In this document: positions 633 through 32,713 of the stretch, piece after piece
How positions within the stretch are numbered: the first letter of the stretch is position 1
How the letters are laid out: every line of letters starts with the position of its first letter
From: Octopus bimaculoides
Lineage: Eukaryota
DNA: 32,713 nucleotides
Direction of reading: 5' to 3'
Assembly: GCF_001194135.2 (NCBI RefSeq)
Contig: NC_069008.1
Coordinates: 15,832,704 to 15,865,416 of the forward strand
Translations under genes and position numbers: made by a program
Notes under the pieces: model-generated
Databases searched by the model: none
Told to the model about the DNA's origin: nothing
Seen by the model: the letters and a program-made list of their open reading frames with translations, nothing else

Positions 633-836
633 GGGAGTGTGAGTGTACGTGCAAATGTCAATGGTATGCTCAAGGTATTGGAAGAGTGTGAGCAAGATAC
701 TACTGATATTAATAGTAATATGGACTGCTTTATCTGTGCAATTCTGAGCCATAGTGCTGACAACGAAATTTTATATATGGATACAAAGGTGAAATTGAGT
801 TAGATAAGCTCGATCGCTGTTCATCTCTAACAGGTT
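633..836 (+). pseudogene. Caspase p20-domain relic (not in the ORF track)
   Basis: The frame from 633 reads GSVSVRANVNGMLKVLEECEQDTTDINSNMDCFICAILSHSADNEILYMDTKVKLS*, then LDRCSSLTG in another frame. This matches CFICAIMSHGGENE...EKCPSLSG of the intact caspase at 24212-25135. The SHG Gly is changed to Ser, there is a stop at 801-803, and a SINE tail interrupts it at ~832. Confidence 0.8.
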
Positions 837-5100: not shown

Positions 5101-5806
5101 ATACGAACTGGATAAATTGAATAACCTAAAAAGTGGATTGACTCAGGGGTTTAGAAGTTGACATTGAGTCATTACCCTATCCCTAACCCTTCAAACTGAA
5201 GTAGATGTAATAGTAAAAAAAATAACAGGTATATTTTTCTTATTGGAGGGCTTATGAGCATTTCCCATGACTTATTCTTAGGTACAGCTTTCGTCTTTAT
5301 GCCTTCCAATGTCATTTGACTGTTCACCTGTACATCAAGCTGTTCTTGATATACAAAGGTGACATAAAAGTGTGCAATGTAGGCCAAATAGCTTGTAAAC
5401 CGTTGGACAAAAGGAAGGTGTAGCCGCAGTCTATAGATCTATTGATTGTAGCACAAGCTTCTATGATTTGATTTGAAAATAATCAGATGTCATGTCTACA
5501 GTTTGTCAGTAAAGAATTGTAAAATTTCCACTGTTGAATGTCTGCTGTTCAATTAATTATCTCATAAAGCTTATGCTGTCGTTTCTCTGTCATTTCAGAA
5601 TGTCTGATGGTATTGGCAGCAGAAGCAATATAGCTTGAGATGATGGTTTAAAGAATAAAGGAACATATACAAAAAACATAAAACTATATTCAGATAAATG
5701 TCTGGTGGAATTGCCATGAAATATTTGCAGAGGACGAGGATATTTGTTAGAAATACAATATAAAAATGGAAAGGAAATCATAAGAAAGAAAGGAAGTTTA
5801 TGGAAA

Positions 5807-7093
5807 ATGTTTGATGTTTGTGCTGCATTAAATGTGAAGAAAGAAAGAAAAAGAAGTGATTTACCTGATAAGATGTCGAAAAAGAAGGGTAAAACTTCAT
5901 ATCAATGTGATATTTGTAAAAAGACATTCCAGAAACAATGTAACCTAACGATTCACAAGAAAAGTCATTCAGGAGAAAAGCCATATCACTGTGAAATATG
6001 TGGTAATTTATTCTTGTTAAAAAATCACTTAACTGTACACAAACGTATTCACACAGGAGAGAGGCCTTACAGCTGTGATATCTGTGGTAAATCTTTCAAA
6101 CAAAGTGGTGACTTAAAGGCTCATAAACGAACTCACACAGGAGAGAAACCATATCGTTGTGATATCTGTGGTAAATCCTTTTCACAAGGCAACCAAGTTA
6201 CTATACACAAACGCATTCATACAGGAGAGAGACCATTTCACTGTGACGTCTGTGGCAAATCCTTCATTGGAAGACATGTCTTAAAGGCCCACAAACGCAT
6301 TCATACTGGAGAAAAACCTTATCACTGTGATATCTGTGGTAAATCATTCACTGGGAGTGGTCACTTAGCCACTCATAAACACATTCATACAGGAGAGAGA
6401 CCTTATCACTGTGATATCTGTGGCAAATCATTCTCTCGTACCCATCACTTATCTTTTCACAAACACATTCATACAGGAGACAAGCCATATCATTGTGATA
6501 TCTGTGGTAAATCATTCTCTCAAAAATCTGGCTCAGTTGTCCACAAACGTATTCATACAAGAGAGAAGCCATATCAATGTGATATCTGTGGTAAATCATT
6601 CTCTCAGGCACATCATGTAACTTCTCACAAAAGCGTTCATACAGGTGAGAAGCCATATCACTGTGATGTCTGTGGTAAATCATTCTCTCAAAAATATGGC
6701 TCAACTGTCCACAAACGTAGTCATACAGGAGAGAAACCATATCACTGTGACATCTGTGCTAAATCATTTTCTCGAACCTGTGACTTAAATAAACACAAAA
6801 TTACTCACACTGGAATCAGACAGCATCACTGTGATATCTGTGGTAAATCATTCTCTGGAAGTGGGGACTTGACTAGACACAACAGGATTCATACAGGGGA
6901 GAAGCCATTTCACTGTGATATCTGTGGCAAATCATTCCCTGAAAAAAGTGTCTTAACTATACACAAACGCATTCACACAGGAGAGAAACCATATCATTGT
7001 GATGTCTGTGGTAAATCTTTCTCTGTAAGTGGTGTTTTAACTAAACACAAACGTATTCATACAGGTGAGAAACCATATCCCTGTATTATTTGA
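5807..7093 (+). CDS. C2H2 zinc-finger protein ZNF-A, 14 tandem fingers (428 aa)
   Basis: Fourteen CxxC-x12-HxxxH units with TGEKP-type linkers. The first in-frame ATG is 5807; the ORF-track start at 5744 is a TTG and that stretch is out of frame in the paralog. Acceptor TTTCAG| at 5598; AATAAA at 7346-7351. Confidence 0.92.
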
Positions 7094-7246
7094 GGTAAGT
7101 CATTCTCTGAAAAGAGTATATTATCTATATATATACGTATTCATACAGGAGAGAAACCATATCACTGTGATATCTGTGATCAAACAATCTCTCATCCAAA
7201 TACCTTAACTACACACAAATGTATTCACTGTGGAGATAGACTGTAA
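7094..7246 (+). pseudogene. Two further zinc fingers stranded behind the ZNF-A stop codon
   Basis: The frame stays open after the TGA: [50 protein letters not shown]. The last finger equals the terminal finger of ZNF-B. Confidence 0.85.
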
Positions 7247-11612: not shown

Positions 11613-12035
11613 TGTGGCTGTGTAATAAGAAGCTTACTTCCCAACCACATGGTTCTGAGTTCAGTCCCACTGTGTGTCACCTTGGGCAAGTGTCTTCTAC
11701 TATAGCCCTCAGGCTACCAAACACTTGTGAATGGATTTAGTAGATGGAATCTTATTTCTTTATTGCCCACAAGGGGCTAAACATAGAGGGGACAAGCAAG
11801 GACAGAAAGAGGGATTAAGTCGATTACATCGACCTCCAGTGCGTAACTGGTACTTAATTTATCAACCCCAAAAGGATGAAAGGCAAAGTCGACCTCGGCG
11901 GAATTTGAACTCAGAACGTAAAGACAGATAAAATACCGCCAAGCATTTCGCCCGAAGCTTGTCGTATATGTATGTGTGTCTTTGTCCCCCACCCCTCCAT
12001 CACTTGACAACCGATGTGTTTGTGTCCCTGTGACA
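11613..12035 (+). mobile_element. SINE family X interrupted by a family Y SINE
   Basis: X head is 11613-11749; X resumes at 11955 (AAGCTTGTCG…). Confidence 0.75.
11750..11954 (-). mobile_element. SINE family Y nested in SINE X (5'-truncated)
   Basis: Reverse complement of 16500-16707. Confidence 0.85.
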
Positions 12036-12849: not shown

Positions 12850-13701
12850 TTATGGTTTTTCTCCGCAATGAATACATTTGTGTGTAGTTAAGGTATTTGG
12901 ATGAGAGAATGATTTACCACAACTATCACAGCGATATGGCTTCTCTCCTGTATGAATACGTTTGTGTACAACTGAGCCAGATTTTTGAGAGAATGATCGA
13001 CCACAGATTTCACATTGATATGGTTTCTCTCCTGTATGAATACGTTTGTGAGAAATGAAAGTACTTCTATAAGAGAATGATTTGCTACAGACATCACACT
13101 GATAAGGTCTCTCTCCTGTATGAATGTGTTTGTGAGCAGCTAAGTGATCACTTCGAGCGAATGATTTACCACAGATTTCACAGTGATGAGGTCTTTCTCC
13201 AGTATGAATGTGTTTGTGAGTCTTTAAGACATGACTCCCAGTGAAGGATTTACCACAGACGTCACAGTGAAATGGTCTCTCTCCTGTATGAATGCGTTTG
13301 TGTATAGTAACTTGGTTGCCTTGTGAAAAGGATTTACCACAGATATCACAACAATAGGGTTTCTCTCCTGTGTGAGTTCGTTTATGAGCCTTTAAGTCAC
13401 CACTTTGCGCCGAAGATTTACCACAGATATCACAGCTGTAAGGCCTCTCTCCTGTGTGAATACGTTTGTGTACAGTTAAGTTATGTTTCAACAAGAATAA
13501 ACTACCACAGATGTCACAGTGAAATGGTCTCTCTCCTGAATGACCTTTTTTGTGAATAGTTAGAATACATTGTTTTTGGAATGTCTTTTTACAAATATCA
13601 CATTGATATGAAGTTTTACCGTTCTTTTTTGACATCTTATCAAGTAAATCACTTCTTTTTCTTTCTTTCTTCACATTTAATGCAGCACAAACATCAGACA
13701 T
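12850..13701 (-). CDS. C2H2 zinc-finger protein ZNF-B, 9 fingers (283 aa), inverted paralog of ZNF-A
   Basis: Leader and fingers 1-5 are nearly identical to ZNF-A. Acceptor TTTCAG| at 13918; AATAAA at 12725-12730 (minus strand), homologous to that of ZNF-A. Confidence 0.92.
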
Positions 13702-14127
13702 TTTCCATAAACTTCCTTTCTTTTTTATGATCCCTTTTCCTTTCCATTTTTATATTGTATTTCAAATAAATATCCTTGTCTTCTGGAAATATTTCATGGT
13801 AATTCCACCAGACGTTTATATGAATATAATTACATCTGCTTTGTATAACATGTTCCTTTAATCTTTAAACCATCATCTCAAGCTATATTGCTTCTGCTGT
13901 CAATACCATCAGACATTCTGAAATGACAGAGAAACAACAATATAAGCTTTACGAGATAATTAATTAAACAGCAGACATTCACCAGTGGGAATTTTACAAT
14001 TCTTTACTGACAAACTGTAGACATGACATCTGATTATTTTCAAATTAAATCATAGAAGCTTAAGCTCAAATCTACATATTTACAGGCTACTGGCACAACT
14101 TAATTTTGTGTAACATTAAATACATAC

Positions 14128-16474: not shown

Positions 16475-16707
16475 GCGAGCTGGAAGAAACGTTAGCACGC
16501 CGGGCGAGATGGTTAGCGGTATTTCGTCTGCCGTTATGTTCTGAGTTTAAATTCCGCCGAGGTCGACTTTGCCTTTCATCCTTTCGGGGTCGATAAATTA
16601 AGTACCAGTTACGCACTGGGGTCGATGTAATCGACTTAATCCCTTTGTCTGTCTTTGTTTGTCCCCTCTGTGTATAGCCCCTTGTGGGTAGTAAAGAAAT
16701 AGGTATT
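16475..16707 (+). mobile_element. SINE family Y, near full length
   Basis: tRNA-like head and B-box. The central GCCTTTCATCCTTTCGGGGTCGATAAA resembles the MetaSINE central domain (recalled, not searched). Confidence 0.8.
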
Positions 16708-19476: not shown

Positions 19477-20517
19477 ATGGAGAACATCAATCACTTGGAC
19501 ACTTCAAACACAACAGTTTTCAACAATATAAATACAGTTAGAGAGACAGACAGAGATGAGAAAGCTGGAGGGGAAAATGTTCTTGAATATCACTGTGAGA
19601 TCTGTAGGAAGACGTTCTCTGCAGAACATGAAGTTTTCAAACACAAAGAAATACACAGGAAGGAAAAACGGTTCTGTTGTGAAATATATGGGAAATATTT
19701 TATCAAGAACAATTTCTTAACAAAACATAAACGAATACACACTGGAGTGAAGCCTTTCCAGTGTGAAATATGTGGAAAAGCATTCTTCAATAGATCTCAC
19801 CTTGAACTTCACAAGCGTAGTCATACAGGAGAAAAACCGTTTCACTGTGAATTATGCGGAAAATCTTTTGTCTCTAATAGTCATTTAACAACACATAAAA
19901 GAATCCACACGGGGGAGAAACCCTATCACTGTGAAATATGTGGGAAATCTTTTATCACAAATGGATTATTAAAAACACATAAAATCACACACAATGGAGA
20001 GAAACCGTTTCACTGTGACATTTGTGGGAAATTATTCTTTAACAGTTCTCATCTTGCAGTTCACAAACGTAGTCACACTGGAGAAAGACCATACCACTGT
20101 GAAATATGTGGGAAATTGTTTGTTTCAAATAGTGATTTAACCAGACACAAACGTATACACACTAAAGAAAAACCCTATCGTTGTGAAATATGTGGAAAAT
20201 CATTTATATATAATTATTATTTAACAAGTCACAGAAGAATACACACAGGAGAGAAACTATATCATTGTGAAGTGTGTGGAAAGTCGTTCTCTGGTAATTC
20301 TAGTCTTGTAGTTCACAACCGATTACATACAGGGGAAAAACCCTATCCTTGCGAAATATGTGGGAAAGCATTCGTTAATAATTCTCATCTTGTGGTTCAC
20401 AAACGTAGTCACACTGGAGAAAAACCCTATCGTTGTGAAATATGTGGAAAATCATTTATGACAAACAGCCACTTAAAAAGACATGCACAAATACACACTG
20501 GAGAGAAGCCTTTTTGA
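19477..20517 (+). CDS. C2H2 zinc-finger protein ZNF-C, 11 fingers (finger 2 broken: CEIY)
   Basis: ATG in good context (AACATGG). CEICGK-type fingers with TGEKP linkers; a different subfamily from ZNF-A/B. Confidence 0.92.
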   Translation: MENINHLDTSNTTVFNNINTVRETDRDEKAGGENVLEYHCEICRKTFSAEHEVFKHKEIHRKEKRFCCEIYGKYFIKNNFLTKHKRIHTGVKPFQCEICGKAFFNRSHLELHKRSHTGEKPFHCELCGKSFVSNSHLTTHKRIHTGEKPYHCEICGKSFITNGLLKTHKITHNGEKPFHCDICGKLFFNSSHLAVHKRSHTGERPYHCEICGKLFVSNSDLTRHKRIHTKEKPYRCEICGKSFIYNYYLTSHRRIHTGEKLYHCEVCGKSFSGNSSLVVHNRLHTGEKPYPCEICGKAFVNNSHLVVHKRSHTGEKPYRCEICGKSFMTNSHLKRHAQIHTGEKPF

Positions 20518-23075: not shown

Positions 23076-24080
23076 ACGGAAATTGCCGAACAATCCGCTG
23101 CAAGAAAATGACAGGAAAATCACAAGATTGAAAGCCTCAACGAAACATTGCGCTACAGGCAAACAAAATAACATCAGAATCTTTCCTTCATTTTAATAAA
23201 CACAGGACTAATGTAAAAGCAGATATATTTTATTCTTACGTTGGCAATTCAAAGACTTTATGTTAACAGCGGACAAATTTCATTAGGAAATCATCCACCA
23301 GATTTTTTAAAATAGCAGAAGAATTGAAAAAACATTGCGCAATGGTGCTGACCTATTATAATGCAAACAGAAAAGAAAGAAAAACAATTACTCTTTGGCA
23401 GACAAAGTTTTACGAAGCCAAGAAAATATGAATGTACATAAATAAAATAGCCTACATATTAATATTGTTCATATTTAGTTGTATATAAAGCAACGTTGTT
23501 TCAATTTTCAGAGTGAAGAGTTATTTTGAAATTTAGAATGTTCCTAGAAGCAAATGTCGTCTTTAAGCAAACATGAAATGACAGTAAAAAAGTAAAAATT
23601 ATTTACGGAAATTTCCGAACAATAAGCTGCAAGAAAATAACAGGTAAATGACAAGATTGCCTTTTCAATCACACTTCAAATATTTTAAGAAATTAAGAAC
23701 TAGCGTAAAAGCAAATACATTTTATTATTTCTTCGGCATTTCGAAGACTTTATTATAATAACAAAATTTATAAGGATTTAAAAATTAGCAGAAGAATTGG
23801 AAAAGCATTAAGCAATGCTGCTGAGATAGAATAACGCCGTGAGAAAGAAAGAAAAACAATTTCTCTTTGGCAGAAACTTTAACGAATCCAGCGATATATG
23901 AAAGCACATGAATAAAATAGCCTGCATATTAATGTTGTTCATATTTAATCGTATATAAAAGAATGTTTGTTCAATTTCCAGAGGGAAGAGTTATTTTGAA
24001 ATTTAAAATGTTCCTAGAAAGCAATGGTGTCATTAGTAAAATTTATGGTAGGAAATAGCGTTAGTGAAACATCTTATTAG
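23076..24080 (+). repeat. Module M, two tandem ~0.5-kb copies (23076-23560, 23603-24080); others at 27525-27650 (partial), 31663-32220 (+) and 32220-32430 (-)
   Basis: Shared ACGGAAATT.CCGAACAAT…GCAAGAAAAT, TAGCAGAAGAATTG.AAAA.CAT, AATAAAATAGCCT.CATATTAAT and TTCAATTT.CAG|AG.GAAGAG. Confidence 0.9.
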
Positions 24081-24211: not shown

Positions 24212-25135
24212 TCAAGCCCATCTCAGTACCGCAAGTTTAAGCAAAATACTCATTAGCACACCGCTCGAGAATAAAAGACAGATTAGATTCTTCTTTTTTT
24301 TTTCTTCTTTTTCTTCTTCTTTTTTGCTCCTCGGTTCAAACTTTAGTTGTTTGAGCAATGTCGACATAATCTGAGGCATTTGTTTCATGCCCTTTTTGTC
24401 TTCAGTGTCGAATTCAGAAGAAGCAACATAGTTAGAGACAGCGGTTAAAAGTGTCAAGATTTCATATTTAGTGCCATATTCAATCAAAAACTTACTTAAA
24501 GCTTGCATATATTTCGAACCCTGTTTTGAATGCCTGTATGACGTATGTTCATTATACGATGAATGAAAAACCAACAGATCTGGCATAATTGGAATATTGA
24601 TTAACGTTTCATTAACTTCTGTTTCAAGTCCATCAGGTACGTGGACTCCTTCATCTTTCTTTTTTCCACGACATGCTTGAACAAAAATTAATTTAGGTAC
24701 TCCGCTTAAAGATGGACACTTCTCGGGTGTCAGGTAAGAAAGCAATTCATGTAGCCCAACCTCCTGTTCGTCCGATCCAGATATCATCTCGTTTTCACCA
24801 CCATGGCTCATAATTGCACAAATAAAGCAACCAATATTGATATAACGTTTATCTTTAAACCCTTTGAAAGCATTGAGCATTTCGTCGGCTGTATTATCTT
24901 GCTTAACTGTGATATCCCCTTCAGAAAATCCAAGTTCTATTAATGCCGCTTTAAAATCTCTTGTGTCTTTTGATGAGCTTTCACGATTTCCAAGCTTTAT
25001 GAACTTTTTGTTGTTGAAGATGTAGGCTACACGTTCCTTTTTAGCATCCATATCATAATTGGCGGAATATTCACTGAGATCAAATGGTGAAGGAGGCTGA
25101 ACGCCTGGTCTAACGTTTGCACTTCCAGCGTCCAT
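24212..25135 (-). CDS. Single-exon caspase (caspase-3/7-like, short prodomain) with a C-terminal hydrophobic extension (307 aa)
   Basis: Intact SHG and QACRG; S1-pocket Arg equivalents in NRESSSKD and SYRHSKQGS; candidate linker cleavage at VPD|G. First ATG at 25135 in strong context (ACTATGG); the ORF-track start at 25144 is TTG. Orthology is not established. Confidence 0.92.
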   Translation of the reverse strand: MDAGSANVRPGVQPPSPFDLSEYSANYDMDAKKERVAYIFNNKKFIKLGNRESSSKDTRDFKAALIELGFSEGDITVKQDNTADEMLNAFKGFKDKRYINIGCFICAIMSHGGENEMISGSDEQEVGLHELLSYLTPEKCPSLSGVPKLIFVQACRGKKKDEGVHVPDGLETEVNETLINIPIMPDLLVFHSSYNEHTSYRHSKQGSKYMQALSKFLIEYGTKYEILTLLTAVSNYVASSEFDTEDKKGMKQMPQIMSTLLKQLKFEPRSKKEEEKEEKKKKNLICLLFSSGVLMSILLKLAVLRWA

Positions 25136-25216
25136 AGTAGTCAATGTAACAATGTGATGAACTGAAGCTAGTTCCGTGTATAATATATTATTTCTGTCCT
25201 CTCAGATTGCTATCAA

Positions 25217-28123: not shown

Positions 28124-28166
<43 letters not shown>

Positions 28167-28211: not shown

Positions 28212-28875
28212 CTAAAGCATATTCTTTTCGTATAATATGCAGAGGCATAAGAAATTCTCGCAGTAAGAAGCTCCATATCCATTTAAGGATTCCACACCTG
28301 NNNNNNNNNNNNNNNNNNNNNNNNNNNNNNNNNNNNNNNNNNNNNNNNNNNNNNNNNNNNNNNNNNNNNNNNNNNNNNNNNNNNNNNNATGGTGTTTCGA
28401 ATAATACAAACTCTGGAATTCAAAAGAGACAAGATAATTTGAATCCGAATCTAGCATCATCGATTTTTTTAATCCCACAACCTGCTTGAATAAAGACTAA
28501 TTTAGGTATTCCTTATAATGATGGACAGCAATCGAGTCTCGGGCAAGAAAGCAATGCATCTAGCTTCACTTCATCGTCGTATCCATATATAGCCTCGTTT
28601 TCTGCACCATGACTCAGAATTGCACAAATAAAGCGATTAATAACGATTTCAGGATTATCTTGCTCAAACTCTTTCATCAAAAGACGATGATTTAAAAAGG
28701 GCATAGGATAATCTTCGTTTTATGAAGATTAGCTCAGCTTTTATACAGATGTAAGAGTTGGACAAATGTTTGAGTGCTGAATCTGTATAAAAGCTGAGGT
28801 CATCATCATGAAATCAAGATTTTCTCATGCCCTTTTTAACTTCTTCGTCTTTTGATGAGCCTTCTTTTGTGTTCG
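28212..28875 (-). pseudogene. Caspase pseudogene 2 (internal fold-back hairpin, stop codon, QAGCG)
   Basis: KEGSSKD…[hairpin]…LMKEFEQDNPEIVINRFICAILSHGAENEAIYGYDDEVKLDALLSCPRLDCCPSL*GIPKLVFIQAGCG. The part beyond the gap (28212-28300) is only weakly similar. Confidence 0.88.
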
Positions 28876-29189
28876 TAGGTGTGTGTGTATGTGTGTGTAT
28901 GTGTGTCTCTCTATCTGTGTCTTCGTAAGCGTGTAGGTGGTATGTGTGCATTTGATTCCGGTCGAGTATGAGTGTACGCGCGAGCGTTTGCGAAATAAAA
29001 AACATGATTTCCTACAAAAACAAAAGCTGAAATTCTATATCGAAATAAATTCTCAATTAAATTATCTTAATTTTAATTCATTGTATTATCCCCATCAAAG
29101 TACTTCAAGTTTAGTCCCTGGCCATATCCGTCCCAAGAGGATTCCGAATCAGAGTGCTTCACAGATTTTACACAAACACACACACATAC

Positions 29190-30690
29190 ACACATCTCCC
29201 TTCAGTACATCCCTGTATCACATCATCTGGCCACCACAGCTTCGCCTCCTCAAACGCTGTTCAGCATACAAAAAGCTGCCTTTGGGAACCTGTCACACTT
29301 CATGCTGCAAATATGTCCTGCCCAGCGCAGCTGCGATAGGGGAATGAGTGCCGAGACACTAACTGCGACTACGTAGTGCATGGCGGAGTGATATGCCAGA
29401 TGGAGGACAGATATTCAAGATGTAGGACTCATGTCAGGGCTTTGACGTGTCGGGGGTTAAGGGCCATGCCCTTCGTTGAATAAATAAAGCAACATAACAC
29501 TGCGTCATTTTACATCTTCATATTCATTTTGCGGTCACTGTCAAGGATGCTCTGTAGATGCTTCTCAAGAAAAACGAAAGCCTTTCTCACCGACTGTATT
29601 CACCACTTAACTTGGAAGTCAGAAGTTTTAGTACAGGTCATTGCACTGGCAAGAGATAAAGGCCTCAGTGTACTTCAATGACTCTCCGTGTACTGTCAAT
29701 GGTTCTGACTCTCTCAATGTAATAGGCCGTATTAGTGGCGTTTTGTATAGCAGTTCAGTGTTTAAAATGTTGATCTTTAGAGAAAATATGTCTGCTGAAC
29801 AATGAAAGTGGTCCATAGTGTGTTGCATGTCATCAATGCTGTTGGCCTCTGCCGAGGACAACACCTTGACTCAGATTTCTTTGATTGTGGAAGAAGCATG
29901 AAGTCGGGCCAGGTTGATCCATTTCCCGTCTATTCTAGTAAGGATGAAAACCTCCTTGTGCGTGTTGACCACCATACTTTCAAGCACAACTGGTTACAAA
30001 GACAGAAGGGTGCAGGGCAAGCACACATCACTACTTCTCACAATGGTTGACTGCAGAAGATTCCCTAAATTCTCCGCCAAATAATTCCCGTGTGGAACTG
30101 GTGGATGATGTGAACAAACTTCTCAGGGCATCCATAGGTCTCCATTTTTCAGAGCATTCATACATCTCCACCGTGTCACATCCTCTGGAGAAGCCCAGAA
30201 AGAGTGTCTACTGTTGCTGCGCTGCTTTCTCATATATTTGTCGCAGTATGAATGCCATGTCCATTGTTGATCTCCCTGGCCTGAAGCCACATTCACACTC
30301 CGCTAAAAACTACTGGGAAATGTGTTTTCAGCCGACTGAGAACGTTCTTCACCAGCAAAAGCCTCATCTCCATGCCATCATCTCAAAACCCCGCTCAATC
30401 CCAATTTACATCTTAATCTTTTTACTCGTGCTCAATATGCGTCTAGGTGGAGATTATAAAAACTGATGCACTCGTCTGTAAATAAAATGGACCCCAGTCC
30501 CACGCGTTCCATTATGAAATCCACAAGTTGCTCTACCATTCTGTGAGGAACTTGTTGCATGTGTCCTGTCTTCTGAGTGTTCTCTTGTAAATCGACTCCC
30601 CGGATGACACTGAGAAGCACTTCTAACTTGATAGCTCTTGCGACATCGTCGACAACGAGGATGACAAAGATGACAATGACATCATGCATT
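29190..30690 (-). mobile_element. RTE-clade LINE reverse-transcriptase relic
   Basis: DVARAIK…; ECGFRPGRSTMDMAFILRQIYEK; YGCPEKFVHIIHQFH; CVLA; RIDGKWINLARL; MQHTMDHF…FSLKIN; and the C-terminal PKGSFLYAEQ…CGGQMM*YRDVLK. Many stops and frameshifts; the YADD motif is lost. Confidence 0.85.
29293..29542 (+). mobile_element. Possible solo LTR inserted in the RTE relic
   Basis: Begins TGTCAC, ends …TGTCA, has AATAAA at ~29479-29488 and interrupts RTE collinearity. No target-site duplication seen. Confidence 0.35.
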
Positions 30691-32483
30691 GTGTATATGA
30701 CATTACAGGATGTCTTTGGGGCCACTTCAGCTTTGTATCGCAAAACAGTTTCATTTTCCAAGGACAAATTAATTTCACTGTAAAATAACGGTCAATTGCA
30801 TGTTAAACGCTCTCGTATATAAGTGTGTTGTGAATGAAAGAGAGCGTGTGTGTGTGTGCGTATGTCTGTGTATGTCTGCGTGTGTGTCTCTGTGTGTGTA
30901 TGTGTGTGTGTGTGTGTATGTATTTGTATGAAATCTTCATAGTTTTCTTAAATTGAATTCTTCTGGTAGGGATACGGAGATCTTAGCTGAAATTAATCGA
31001 ATGAATTACAACCAAGGTGTAGTTATGGTGAAGAAAACATATATTCCCAGCTTTTCTTTCAACCATATCCAAATTTTTAGTGAGGGATTCATCTTTTTCT
31101 TGCACATTTCTTCTACATTCACATTTTTCTTCTACGCAGGCGCAAAGTAACATATCCAATACGTCTAACATAAGGAGTGTTGTACTTTTGGAAAGCAGGA
31201 AAATATATGAGAAGCAACATAGGATCTTTTTTCTAGAAGCCTGAAATTGAAAAAAATAATTTTACAGATTCATAATCTCCGTATTTCTCAACGTCGTTTC
31301 TTTAAAAAATTTAACATTTTTTTTTTTAATTGTAAAATAAAACACATTTGGCTGGGAAAGAAGAAATTTCATTTTGGAAAATTTCTTTTTTATTCTGGGA
31401 AAATGGTAATCTTCCATAACGAAAACATCGGAATGAGTAAGAAATTTTTGAAAACAAATATGCAGTTGGGGTTGGGGTAAACCCGCCGAAAATTGAAACA
31501 GAAGGGATTACATAGAAACATATCTGAAGGCTGAACTCATCAGTGAGATTGTTAAAGGTTCAATATTGATCAAATGTCTTTCCTTCAGGAGTTGGCATTT
31601 AAAAATTTGAGCAATGTTTCGTTGATGGTCTAAATCTTCGGCAGTTTCCGTAACGAACTACTTACGGAAATTATCGAGCAATCAGATGCAAGAAAATAAA
31701 AAGATTGAACCCATGATCGAAACATTGCGTTGCAGGCAAAGAAAATTACAGAAACAGTTTTCATTCACACTTTACATATTTTAATAAATTAAGAACTGGC
31801 GTAAAAGTTGATAGATTTTTATTATGTTGTTGGAAATTCAGAGATGTCACATTAATATGAGACTAATTTTATTAGGAGATTATCCATAAGATTTAAAAAA
31901 GAATAGCAGAATAATTGAAAAAATATTACGCAATGGGGCTGAGATAGTTTAATGCAGTGAGAGAAGAAAGAAAAACGATTTCTCTTTGGCAAACAAACTT
32001 TTACTGATCCAGCGATATATGAAAATACATGAATAAAATAGCCTACATATTAATATTGTTCATATTTAGTTGTATATAAAAAAATGTTAGTTCAATTTTC
32101 AAAGTGTAGAATTATTGTGAAATTTAGAATGGACCTATAAGGCCCTGGTGTTCTTAGTAAAATTTACGGGAGGAAATAGTTTTAGTCAAGCACCTTAAAA
32201 TGTTAGAGGATATTTATTTAACGAAAATCAATTTGTAGGTTATTTTATTCCTGTGCTTTCATACATCGCTGGATTCGTAAAACATTGTCTGCGAAACAGC
32301 AATTGGTTTTCTTTTGTCTTCTCCCTGCATTACACTTTCTCAGCATCATTGCGTAATATTTCTTCAATTCTTCGGCTATTTGTTTCGCTCTGGTGGATAA
32401 TCTCCTGTTATTAACATAATGACTCCGAAATGACAACGAAATAATAAAATGTAGCAGCGTTTACGTTAGTCTTTCGTGTATCG

Positions 32484-32713
32484 CAGAATTGCACAAATAA
32501 ATCGATTAATAACGATTTCAGGATTATCTTGCTCAAACTCTTTCATCAAAACACGGAGATGTTAAAAAGGGCATGAGAAAATCTTGATTTCATGATGATG
32601 ACCTCAGCTTTTATACAGATTCAGCACTCAAACATTTGTCCAACTCTTACATCTGTATAAAAGCTGAGCTAATCTTCATAAAACGAAGATTATCCTATGC
32701 CCTTTTTAAATCA
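32484..32713 (-). pseudogene. Caspase pseudogene 3 (hairpin copy; runs off the window end)
   Basis: LMKEFEQDNPEIVINRFICAIL, then homology is lost at ~32484. Hairpin core is identical to pseudogene 2 but inverted. Confidence 0.85.

What the first reader, a model, noticed from the sequence alone, without database searches (positions are those of the whole stretch)
28674..28858. Long fold-back hairpin made from caspase coding sequence (hpRNA/miRNA-like precursor candidate)
Arms 28674-28750 and 28781-28858 (77/78 nt) enclose a 30-nt loop. There is an 18-bp perfect inner stem (CTCAGCTTTTATACAGAT), a 28-nt middle with 9 mismatches, and a well-paired outer part. Arms and loop translate as caspase (SSKD..LKRA..NL.F.ED.LSFYTD-VRVGQMFEC, then LMKEF). 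The return junction uses TCATCAAAA/TTTTGATGA microhomology, as expected for a template-switch inverted duplication. Gene-derived hairpins of this kind give endo-siRNAs in Drosophila and are a known route to new plant miRNAs. Here it could regulate caspase paralogs or be an ADAR substrate (hypothesis). Similarity to the intact neighbour is only moderate, so the best target may be another paralog.
Basis: partly seen in the sequence, partly recalled or inferred. Interest (0 to 1): 0.8.

Follow-up and report, generated by a model that had tools for sequence, protein, structure and literature searches.

The report
Old palindrome in dead octopus caspase
The 185-base fold-back is real, but it is an inverted duplication tens of millions of years old inside a dead caspase gene copy of the California two-spot octopus, and it looks like a slowly decaying scar of DNA-copying errors rather than a working regulatory RNA.

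Summary
The hairpin at 28674-28858 exists as described: arms of 77 and 78 nt, a 30-nt loop, RNA dG -94 kcal/mol, z = -16.

The window is Octopus bimaculoides chromosome CM046628.1, inside a tandem cluster of intronless caspase genes. The hairpin lies in a caspase pseudogene. Its arms and loop are caspase codons (SSKD...YTD, then VRVGQMFEC). Intact paralogs have the same pieces contiguous and in sense orientation.

The hairpin is syntenic in O. vulgaris and O. sinensis (long-read assemblies), so it predates a split dated 34-50 My ago. There the palindrome is longer (271 nt), and one arm has lost 29 nt. Between species, 0 of 68 stem pairs show compensatory change, 3 are broken and 23 are deleted. 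The arms (91-92% identical) are no better conserved than noncoding flank (89.5%).

The arms share at most 18/21 nt with the intact caspases examined. A published survey found no endo-siRNA pathway in molluscs. In O. bimaculoides a second, flipped copy (32543-32713) ends a ~3.8-kb segment that is inverted relative to O. vulgaris.

Verdict: a neutral, recombination-prone DNA palindrome. A regulatory RNA role is unsupported. Transcription could not be tested.

The parts
28781..28858 (-). Arm A_R. On the gene's sense (-) strand it reads SSKDEEVKKGMRKS*FHDDDLSFYTD. It is the sense-oriented copy of caspase segment A.
   Evidence: It aligns with GSSKDTEDFK..LGFxEDDIxVYTD of intact paralogs. It is 91% identical to O. 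vulgaris L003:5407-5482.
28751..28780 (+). Loop B. These are caspase codons VRVGQMFEC on the + strand, so they are inverted relative to the pseudogene body on the - strand.
   Evidence: The orientation relative to the p20 remainder is the same in O. vulgaris and O. sinensis. It is 83% identical between species.
28674..28750 (+). Arm A_L. This is the inverted copy of caspase segment A. On the + strand it reads SSKDDDLKRA*DNLRF / FYED*LSFYTD, with a frameshift between the two parts.
   Evidence: It shares a 3-nt and a 1-nt deletion with A_R relative to intact paralogs. O. vulgaris and O. sinensis lack 29 nt of this arm.
28423..28683 (-). Remainder of the caspase p20 pseudogene (segment C onward): LLMKEFEQDNPEIVINRFICAILSHG...CPSL*GIPKLVFIQAGCG. 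It has an in-frame TAA at 28513-28515, and QAGCG replaces the active-site motif QACRG. An N gap at 28301-28388 cuts it off.
   Evidence: PF00656, E = 8e-7. The stop is at the same codon in O. vulgaris, where it is TAG. Only P0007 residues ~28-133 and 226-254 survive in the ortholog.
28859..28955 (.). Rearrangement junction plus TG-rich microsatellite directly outside arm A_R. About 10 nt of filler (GCCTTCTTTT) come first. The following sequence is homologous to the microsatellite that precedes the same segment in O. vulgaris.
28859..32483 (.). A ~3.6-kb segment. Together with copy 2 of the hairpin it is inverted relative to O. vulgaris. It lies between the two mutually inverted hairpin copies.
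   Evidence: L003 2909-5539 is colinear with window 28956-32676 in + orientation, while L003 5407-13306 is colinear with window 28858-23548 in - orientation. ORFs in the segment have no Pfam domain.
32484..32552 (+). C'p, an inverted partial copy of caspase segment C. It extends the palindrome arm beyond TCATCAAAA in copy 2. It is orthologous to L003:5350-5418 of O. vulgaris.
32543..32713 (+). Second copy of the hairpin (A_R*, loop, and the first 63 nt of A_L'), flipped relative to copy 1. It runs directly into an assembly gap of at least 2.4 kb.
   Evidence: 98.2% identity to 28688-28858 in reverse orientation; the loop is the exact reverse complement, 63/63 nt of A_L' are identical, and the 3 differences all lie in the outer 18 nt. 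Ns from 32714.
24212..25144 (-). Intact intronless neighbouring caspase (310-aa ORF; SHG and QACRG present). It shows the ancestral contiguous A-B-C arrangement.
   Evidence: (P0001, 100% identity; best named hits are Octopus caspase-3/7-like).

Best explanation
The hairpin is a structural scar in a dead gene, not a working RNA gene.

Setting: in a tandem cluster of intronless caspase genes of Octopus, one copy had already lost its reading frame.

Step 1 (inferred). A replication template switch replaced segment B with the reverse complement of A+B. In gene-sense order, A-B-C became A-B'-A'-C. The strand returned to C at a short string (TTTTGATGA) that is the reverse complement of the start of A.

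Step 2 (inferred). A fold-back event later extended the palindrome outward by ~60-69 nt of inverted C. This replaced the N-terminal part of the gene. Steps 1 and 2 both happened before O. bimaculoides split from O. vulgaris/O. sinensis.

After that the palindrome drifted neutrally (shown). It also acted as a recombination-prone inverted repeat:
- O. vulgaris/O. sinensis lost 29 nt of one arm (shown).
- The O. bimaculoides arms were homogenised (shown by shared derived bases).
- In O. bimaculoides a ~3.8-kb inversion has one breakpoint exactly at the hairpin's outer edge. It left a hairpin copy at each end, mutually inverted and ~98% identical (shown in the assembly; the mechanism is inferred).

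If the locus is transcribed, the RNA would fold into a 77-bp imperfect duplex and would probably be edited by ADAR. Nothing indicates that this has been selected for.
For: Origin.
- Nine intact octopus caspases at the loci held have A-B-C contiguous in sense orientation, with TCATCAAAAGAC at the start of A.
- Both arms share derived bases (CTCAGCTTTT), a 3-nt deletion and a 1-nt frameshift deletion relative to paralogs. Each arm also has its own derived changes.

Pseudogene status.
- In-frame stop at the same codon in both species (TAA / TAG).
- QACRG is changed to QAGCG in O. bimaculoides and QAGRE in O. vulgaris.
- The N-terminus and P0007 residues 134-225 are missing.

Age.
- The ortholog is syntenic. 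It lies ~4 kb upstream of the ortholog of the neighbouring caspase in O. vulgaris (L003:5350-5820) and O. sinensis (L005:5412-5882).
- Arm divergence is about 1.4 times the between-species flank divergence.

Neutrality.
- Of 68 pairs, 40 are unchanged, 2 change on one side and keep pairing, 3 change on one side and break, 0 are compensatory and 23 are deleted.
- The RNAalifold covariation term is +0.57, which is no support.
- Identity between species: arms 0.91-0.92, noncoding flank 0.895, pseudogene body 0.885.

Instability.
- 29-nt arm deletion.
- Flipped second copy and inverted segment.
- The junction has ~10 nt of filler next to a microsatellite.
- Both O. bimaculoides C arms share the derived TTAATCGC, against TTGATTGC in both O. 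vulgaris arms.

Known mechanisms.
- Template switching creates hairpins and inverts loops (PMC8794818, PMC10710096).
- Inverted repeats trigger fold-back rearrangements (PMC10164571).
- Inversions can carry inverted duplications at their breakpoints (PMC1885836).
Against: - No expression or small-RNA data could be examined, so transcription and processing are untested.
- The palindrome has stayed strongly foldable for 34-50 My in three species (O. vulgaris 271 nt, -133.7 kcal/mol, z = -16). That could be read as retention. However, ~10% neutral divergence is too little to erase it.
- Effectively only two independent lineages were compared, so the power to detect covariation is low.
- The order of steps 1 and 2 is inferred, as are the exact switch points. 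No outgroup with the pre-event state was available.
- The GGC immediately outside arm A_R in copy 1 matches the Gly codon of intact paralogs. The preferred history does not explain this.
- Copy 2 ends in an assembly gap within a very fragmented short-read-based assembly.
Confidence: 0.78

Rival explanations
1. Functional hairpin RNA. The locus is transcribed, and the duplex is diced into siRNA- or miRNA-class small RNAs that repress caspase paralogs.
For: - Very stable fold on both strands.
- Derived from a gene family with many paralogs nearby.
- The palindrome is retained in three species.
- Gene-derived hpRNAs are real regulators in Drosophila (PMC10317233, PMC10292708).
- Template switching is a documented route to new miRNAs (PMC10710096).
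Against: - Molluscs, including O. bimaculoides, lack siRNA-class Dicer and Ago, and their small-RNA libraries show no endo-siRNA signature (PMC12479628).
- A 77-bp stem is far longer than a canonical animal pre-miRNA (own knowledge).
- No Rfam hit.
- The inner-stem sequence is absent from the held supplements of the octopus miRNA catalogue (weak evidence).
- No compensatory changes, and 23 of 68 pairs are deleted in the sister lineage.
- Arms are no more conserved than the flank.
- Best complementarity to the intact caspases examined is 18 of 21 nt, with exact runs of 12-13 nt.
Confidence: 0.04
2. Incidental ADAR substrate. The pseudogene lies within some transcribed unit (read-through, intron or lncRNA). 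The duplex is hyper-edited A-to-I like many octopus non-coding hairpins, without a specific function.
For: - Coleoids edit extensively, mostly in introns and UTRs where hairpins are enriched (PMC9699675).
- The duplex is long enough for promiscuous ADAR editing (established knowledge).
- This reading is compatible with neutral evolution of the sequence.
Against: - No evidence that the locus is transcribed.
- Neither ORF overlapping the hairpin is on record in any public assembly searched.
- No related ORF was found.
- This is a side effect rather than an alternative origin, and it does not conflict with the best explanation.
Confidence: 0.12
3. Assembly artefact. Either the hairpin itself, or the second flipped copy and the apparent 3.8-kb inversion, come from misassembly of a palindrome in a short-read-based, highly fragmented assembly.
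For: - The O. bimaculoides v2 assembly has 713,915 contigs (PMC10700109).
- Copy 2 ends exactly at an N gap.
- Palindromes let assemblers traverse a loop in either orientation.
Against: - For the hairpin itself, this is excluded. The arms differ by 15%, and the same structure is present in ONT- and PacBio-based assemblies of two other species.
- Both copies lie on one gap-free stretch, 28389-32713.
- The copies differ at 3 positions. At two of them copy 2 keeps the O. vulgaris state, and at one copy 1 does, so each copy has private changes.
- The junction TTTTGATGA|GCCTTCTTTTG shares no repeat that could cause a graph mis-join.
Confidence: 0.2
4. Mobile element. The fold-back is a MITE-like or foldback transposon with terminal inverted repeats that happens to lie next to a caspase fragment.
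For: - The size (185-271 nt) and terminal inverted repeats resemble MITEs.
- There are two copies in the window.
Against: - Arms, loop and arm extension are all caspase coding sequence, colinear with intact paralogs.
- One arm continues without a break into the p20 pseudogene.
- There is no target-site duplication.
- Only the one syntenic copy occurs across ~100 kb of five octopus loci.
- The second O. bimaculoides copy is explained by the local inversion.
Confidence: 0.01

Closest known systems
Template-switch mutation (TSM) hairpins (Monttinen & Loytynoja, PNAS 2022, PMC8794818; Monttinen et al., PNAS 2023, PMC10710096)
   Same: - A reverse-complement copy of immediately adjacent sequence is created in one step and gives a long, initially perfect stem.
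- The return is at a short inverted homology.
- Whole-loop or whole-hairpin inversion occurs later, as those papers describe for MIR633 and rRNA loops.
   Different: - The arms here (77 nt, later ~146 nt) are much longer than most reported TSMs.
- The host is a pseudogene.
- There is no evidence that the product became an RNA gene.
- The stem has decayed rather than been maintained.
Drosophila hairpin-RNA (hpRNA) loci that give endo-siRNAs (for example PMC10317233, PMC10292708)
   Same: It is an inverted duplication derived from a protein-coding gene family, and its transcript would form a long intramolecular duplex.
   Different: - hpRNAs depend on Dicer-2 and AGO2, and molluscs lack that pathway (PMC12479628).
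- hpRNAs keep extensive near-perfect complementarity to a target. Here the best match is 18 of 21 nt to the paralogs tested.
- hpRNA arms are usually hundreds of nt long (own knowledge).
Plant miRNA genes born by inverted duplication of their target genes (Allen et al. 2004, Nat Genet; cited from memory, not read here)
   Same: A fold-back is made from coding sequence of a gene family.
   Different: - That route is plant-specific and uses DCL processing.
- Young loci retain extended target complementarity.
- Neither condition is met here.
Fold-back inversions and palindrome growth from inverted repeats after DNA breaks (PMC10164571, PMC3834830, PMC6007334)
   Same: - An existing inverted repeat lets a resected 3' end fold back and prime synthesis. 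That extends the palindrome outward, and here it would add the inverted partial C.
- Inverted repeats act as hotspots for deletion and rearrangement.
   Different: Those systems are yeast and cancer models with large amplifications. Here the change is small, fixed in the germ line, and followed over tens of millions of years.
Inversions with inverted duplications at their breakpoints: the staggered-break model in Drosophila (Ranz et al. 2007, PMC1885836)
   Same: The sequence at one breakpoint (here the hairpin) is present at both ends of the inverted segment, in mutually inverted orientation.
   Different: - The duplicated piece is itself a palindrome, and the breakpoint coincides with its edge. 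That suggests breakage at a hairpin or cruciform.
- The far end is hidden by an assembly gap, so the model is not fully verified.

Membership tests
Template-switch mutation product | The new sequence is the reverse complement of sequence lying immediately nearby at the same locus | tested here: met
   The arms are 85% complementary and 30 nt apart. Both are homologous to caspase segment A.
Template-switch mutation product | The ancestral state lacks the inverted copy | tested here: inconclusive
   Nine intact paralogs have A-B-C contiguous in sense orientation. No orthologous outgroup with the pre-event state was available, because all three species already carry the hairpin.
Template-switch mutation product | The switch and return points show short homology | tested here: met
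   The last 9 nt of A' (TTTTGATGA) also form the start of C (LLMKEF). Paralogs have the similar string CTTTGGACGAG at that place. The exact pre-event length of the homology cannot be reconstructed. The other junction shows at most 2 nt.
hpRNA / endo-siRNA locus | The host has a dedicated siRNA pathway (siRNA-class Dicer and Ago) | not tested
   I did not test this. The literature reports the pathway absent in 32 molluscs including O. bimaculoides (PMC12479628).
hpRNA / endo-siRNA locus | Near-perfect extended complementarity to a target gene | tested here: not met
   Against four O. bimaculoides caspase-cluster ORFs and one O. vulgaris caspase CDS, the longest exact match is 12-13 nt and the best 21-mer is 18/21. 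O. bimaculoides paralogs on another chromosome (P0014, P0016, P0019) were not tested at the DNA level.
hpRNA / endo-siRNA locus | The locus is transcribed and yields ~21-nt duplex small RNAs with 2-nt overhangs | not testable with these tools
   No read data were accessible. Exact-ORF look-ups and a homology search found no record.
Canonical animal miRNA gene | A ~60-70-nt precursor with a ~22-nt duplex on a ~33-35-bp stem, conserved in sequence between related species | tested here: not met
   - The stem is 77 bp within a 185-nt fold.
- One arm has lost 29 nt in O. vulgaris and O. sinensis.
- No Rfam family matches.
- The sequence is not found in the held supplements of the two-species octopus miRNA catalogue.
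- The precursor dimensions are from established knowledge.
Structured RNA under selection | Compensatory substitutions and stems conserved above flanks | tested here: not met
   There are 0 compensatory changes, 3 broken pairs and 23 deleted pairs out of 68. The covariation term is +0.57. Arm identity is 0.91-0.92 against 0.895 for the flank. Power is limited to two lineages.
Caspase (Peptidase_C14) gene | Intact ORF with the catalytic His (SHG) and Cys (QACxG) | tested here: not met
   - SHG is present, but QAGCG replaces QACRG.
- There is an in-frame TAA at 28513-28515.
- There are frameshifts in segment A.
- The N-terminus and most of p10 are missing.
It is a pseudogene.
MITE / foldback transposon | Terminal inverted repeats with target-site duplication and dispersed copies | tested here: not met
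   There is no target-site duplication. One arm is continuous with the caspase body. Only the syntenic copy appears in ~100 kb of octopus loci. No genome-wide search was possible.

The most novel reading that the evidence does not exclude
The palindrome is not inert. There are two possibilities.

(a) It is transcribed, and the miRNA machinery or ADAR processes it into molecules that act on the fast-evolving caspase cluster. That would be a first gene-derived hairpin regulator in a cephalopod.

(b) The two mutually inverted hairpin copies in O. bimaculoides flank a 3.6-kb segment that still flips by recombination. That would give a structural polymorphism next to an intact caspase gene.
Probability: 0.07. 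Interest if true: 0.6.

Novelty: new member of a known kind. Interest (0 to 1): 0.22.

Why it matters
As a regulatory-RNA candidate it does not hold up, so it should not be carried forward as one.

It is still a clean natural example of the life history of a template-switch palindrome. It was born inside a dead paralog of a tandem gene family and was then extended outward. Over 34-50 My and three species it has suffered arm deletion, arm homogenisation and an inversion whose breakpoint sits at the hairpin edge.

This is useful as a caution. Very low folding energies and a coding-sequence origin are not evidence of an RNA function. It is also a small data point for how inverted repeats shape local structural evolution in cephalopod gene clusters.

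Tried and rejected
- Rfam scan of the whole window found nothing.
- Exact look-ups of the neighbour's 310-aa TTG ORF and of the two ORFs that overlap the hairpin found no record. The ATG-started 307-aa product P0001 did give the locus.
- A homology search with the 63-aa pseudogene ORF, made to find transcripts or an intact parent gene, returned no candidates. This says nothing about transcription.
- Searching the supplements of the octopus miRNA paper for the inner-stem sequence gave no occurrence. The evidence is weak, because the files may not list all precursors.
- I first read the two copies as the same flank plus a flipped hairpin, produced by recombination within the arms. I dropped this once the O. 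vulgaris ortholog showed that the shared flank is the palindrome's own arm extension, and that a 3.8-kb segment is inverted.
- I considered that the two arms came from different paralogs, because the middle of the arms is 32% divergent. I rejected this because both arms share the same deletions and derived bases, and the clustering is only marginal (P = 0.04).
- I considered that copy 1's outer flank is residual N-terminal caspase sequence. Only GGC matches and the rest is at background identity, so this stays unexplained.
- The MITE reading was rejected (see rivals).
- Pfam scan of ORFs in the inverted segment found no domains.
Full report
**1. The observation**

The hairpin is in the sequence exactly as described. 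Arms 28674-28750 and 28781-28858 enclose a 30-nt loop. The inner 18 bp are perfect, the middle 28 nt carry 9 mismatches, and the outer ~32 nt have two mismatches and one indel.

It folds far better than chance:
- RNA, + strand: -94 kcal/mol, z = -16.3, 0 of 200 shuffles as good.
- RNA, - strand: -79.4 kcal/mol, z = -13.5.
- DNA: -51.3 kcal/mol, z = -12.4.

The uneven spread of mismatches is only marginally non-random (P = 0.04). An 18-nt clean run is expected given 12 differences (P = 0.40). The perfect inner stem therefore needs no special explanation.

**2. Where we are**

The window is a eukaryotic draft scaffold with six N gaps and many CA microsatellites.

The ORF at 24212-25144 (- strand) is a complete, intronless 310-aa caspase. 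Its closest named relatives are Octopus caspase-3/7-like proteins, and its own product lies on an 18.6-Mb contig. That contig is Octopus bimaculoides GCA_001194135.2, chromosome CM046628.1. A window coordinate x corresponds to record coordinate 15,832,703 + x.

More caspase genes lie just outside the window, and another fragment lies at 666-835. The hairpin therefore sits in a tandem caspase cluster.

**3. The host is a pseudogene**

On the - strand, 28683-28423 reads LLMKEFEQDNPEIVINRFICAILSHG...CPSL*GIPKLVFIQAGCG (Pfam Peptidase_C14, E = 8e-7). The defects are:
- an in-frame TAA stop;
- QAGCG in place of the catalytic QACRG;
- no N-terminal part;
- in the ortholog, no P0007 residues 134-225.

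**4. Anatomy in terms of the gene**

I define three segments of the caspase:
- A: the 77 nt encoding SSKD...YTD.
- B: the next 30 nt (VRVGQMFEC).
- C: what follows (LMKEFEQDNPE...).

Nine intact caspases from three octopus species have A-B-C contiguous in sense orientation, with TCATCAAAAGAC at the start of A. In gene-sense order the pseudogene instead reads A (sense), B (antisense), A (antisense), C (sense).

One template switch explains this. The copying strand left at the A/B boundary. It copied the opposite strand back through B and A. It then returned at C, where the last 9 nt of the inverted arm (TTTTGATGA) also form the start of C. Paralogs carry the similar string CTTTGGACGAG there.

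Relative to paralogs, both arms share a 3-nt deletion, a 1-nt frameshift deletion and several derived bases. Each arm also has private changes. The frame was probably broken before the duplication, and both arms have drifted since.

**5. Orthologs**

O. vulgaris locus L003 carries P0002, the ortholog of the neighbouring intact caspase. It has one copy of the same structure about 4 kb upstream, at L003:5350-5820 (OX597841.1:6,307,537-6,307,807 for the palindrome). O. sinensis has it too, 99.7% identical to O. vulgaris.

Both are long-read assemblies (PMC10700109), so the hairpin is not an assembly artefact. It also predates the split of O. bimaculoides from that clade, dated at 34 My (PMC10700109) or about 50 My (PMC9699675). 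The stop codon falls at the same codon in both species, as TAA and TAG.

In these species the palindrome is longer. An inverted partial copy of C (C'p, ~60-69 nt) precedes arm A, giving a 271-nt fold of -133.7 kcal/mol, z = -16. The arm end at TCATCAAAA is therefore internal to a longer arm there.

The extension is what a fold-back event would produce. After a break outside the hairpin, the 3' end snaps back on the existing arms and copies C outward. This step is inferred. The mechanism is known from inverted-repeat studies (PMC10164571, PMC3834830).

**6. Is the pairing under selection?**

I compared O. bimaculoides copy 1 with O. vulgaris over the 68 predicted pairs:

| Outcome in O. vulgaris | Pairs |
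|---|---|
| Unchanged | 40 |
| One side changed, pairing kept as a wobble | 2 |
| One side changed, pairing broken (includes one in the perfect inner stem) | 3 |
| Compensatory change | 0 |
| Deleted (29-nt deletion in one arm) | 23 |

RNAalifold gives a covariation term of +0.57, which is no support.

Between-species identity:

| Region | Identity |
|---|---|
| Arms | 0.91-0.92 |
| Loop | 0.83 |
| Upstream noncoding flank | 0.895 |
| Rest of the pseudogene | 0.885 |

The arms are not measurably more conserved than neutral sequence. Arm-to-arm divergence is about 1.4 times the between-species flank divergence, which fits an origin somewhat before the split (a rough estimate).

**7. Could it target anything?**

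I compared the arms with four O. bimaculoides caspase-cluster ORFs and one O. vulgaris caspase CDS. The longest exact match is 12-13 nt and the best 21-nt window has 18 matches.

A survey of small-RNA pathways in 32 molluscs, including O. bimaculoides, found miRNA and piRNA factors. It found no siRNA-class Dicer or Ago and no endo-siRNA read signature (PMC12479628).

The stem is much longer than a canonical animal miRNA precursor. Rfam has no match. The inner-stem sequence is absent from the held supplements of the two-species octopus miRNA catalogue.

Transcription could not be tested. Look-ups of the ORFs that overlap the hairpin and a homology search found nothing on record, which says nothing either way.

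**8. The second copy and the inversion**

Window 32543-32713 is a second copy of the hairpin.
- It is 98.2% identical to copy 1 but in reverse orientation.
- The loop is the exact reverse complement, and 63/63 nt of one arm are identical.
- Three differences are all confined to the outer 18 nt of the other arm.
- It is preceded by C'p and by a flank orthologous to the O. vulgaris left flank.
- It runs straight into an N gap of at least 2.4 kb.

Synteny shows that L003 2909-5539 is colinear with window 28956-32676 in + orientation. L003 5407-13306 is colinear with window 28858-23548 in - orientation.

So, relative to O. vulgaris, a ~3.8-kb piece is inverted in the O. bimaculoides assembly. One breakpoint lies in a microsatellite. 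The other lies exactly at the outer edge of the hairpin (28858|28859, with ~10 nt of filler), and a hairpin copy sits at each end.

This is the pattern of inversions with inverted duplications at their breakpoints (PMC1885836). Here it suggests breakage at the palindrome.

Several points favour a real event over misassembly:
- Both copies lie on one gap-free stretch.
- Each copy has private changes relative to O. vulgaris.
- The junction shares no repeat that could mis-join a graph.

The assembly is nevertheless very fragmented (713,915 contigs) and the far junction is hidden. I put the chance of an artefact at about 20%.

Copy-to-copy divergence is about 0.2 times the species divergence, so the event is comparatively recent. 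Both O. bimaculoides C arms share the derived TTAATCGC, against TTGATTGC in both O. vulgaris arms. This shows that the arms were homogenised in the O. bimaculoides lineage.

**9. Verdict**

The functional interpretation is not supported.

The best reading (about 0.78) is a neutral, decaying DNA palindrome in a dead caspase paralog. It has repeatedly provoked local rearrangement.

It is a new instance of a known kind of event: a template-switch or fold-back palindrome. It has modest interest as a case history followed over time. It also shows that a striking folding energy plus a coding-sequence origin does not make an RNA gene.

**10. Left unexplained**

- The GGC just outside arm A_R in copy 1 equals the Gly codon that precedes SSKD in intact paralogs.
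- The three copy-1/copy-2 differences cluster within 18 nt of the junction.

Noticed in passing
window 24212-25144 (-): The intact intronless caspase (SHG and QACRG present) ends in a Lys/Glu-rich stretch followed by a ~21-residue hydrophobic tail (NLICLLFSSGVLMSILLKLAVLRWA). The O. vulgaris and O. sinensis orthologs (P0002, P0003) lack this tail. It could be a tail anchor or simply read-through after loss of a stop codon. The orthologs are only 61-64% identical in protein, so the cluster evolves fast.
   Followed up: no
window 666-835 (+): Another caspase p20 fragment (VLEECEQDTTDINSNMDCFICAILSHSADNEILY...). It lies on the opposite strand to the other copies, close to an N gap (1166-1605), and is probably a further pseudogene of the cluster.
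   Followed up: partly
window 19477-20517 (+); also 5898-7241 and 12851-13610: A 346-aa ORF with at least nine C2H2 zinc fingers (Pfam zf-C2H2 / zf-H2C2_2). Two further finger arrays have 84-nt periodicity. Region 5407-6657 is an 89%-identical inverted copy of 12851-14109, so C2H2 genes are also duplicated here.
   Followed up: partly
window 11753-11954 and 16501-16707; L003:19592-20558: A ~190-nt unit is present as two inverted single copies in the window. The one at 16501-16707 abuts an N gap. In O. vulgaris it forms five tandem copies at 87-93% identity, so it is a satellite-like repeat shared between the species.
   Followed up: no
window 28124-28161 and 28876-28913: A (CA)n run and a (TG)n-rich run flank the pseudogene fragment in mutually inverted orientation (84% complementary, 714 nt apart). 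This is low-complexity sequence and probably trivial, but the second run lies at the inversion junction.
   Followed up: partly
window 29110-30448 vs L003:3066-3089: About 1.3 kb is present in O. bimaculoides but absent at the orthologous place in O. vulgaris. It resembles another O. vulgaris stretch (L003:7072-8978, 67-73% identical). It is probably a repeat insertion. Its ORFs have no Pfam domain.
   Followed up: partly
window 32224-32470; 31874-32057; 23206-23466; 23699-23936: A ~250-nt local repeat occurs in both orientations just left of hairpin copy 2 and downstream of the intact caspase. It also appears downstream of three caspase genes in O. vulgaris (L003 ~12.9 kb, 15.3 kb and 22.2 kb). 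It seems to be part of the tandem unit of the caspase array.
   Followed up: no
window 28859-28861 and 28841-28849: The GGC just outside arm A_R equals the Gly codon that precedes SSKD in intact paralogs. All three differences between the two hairpin copies fall within 18 nt of this junction. The preferred history explains neither observation.
   Followed up: partly
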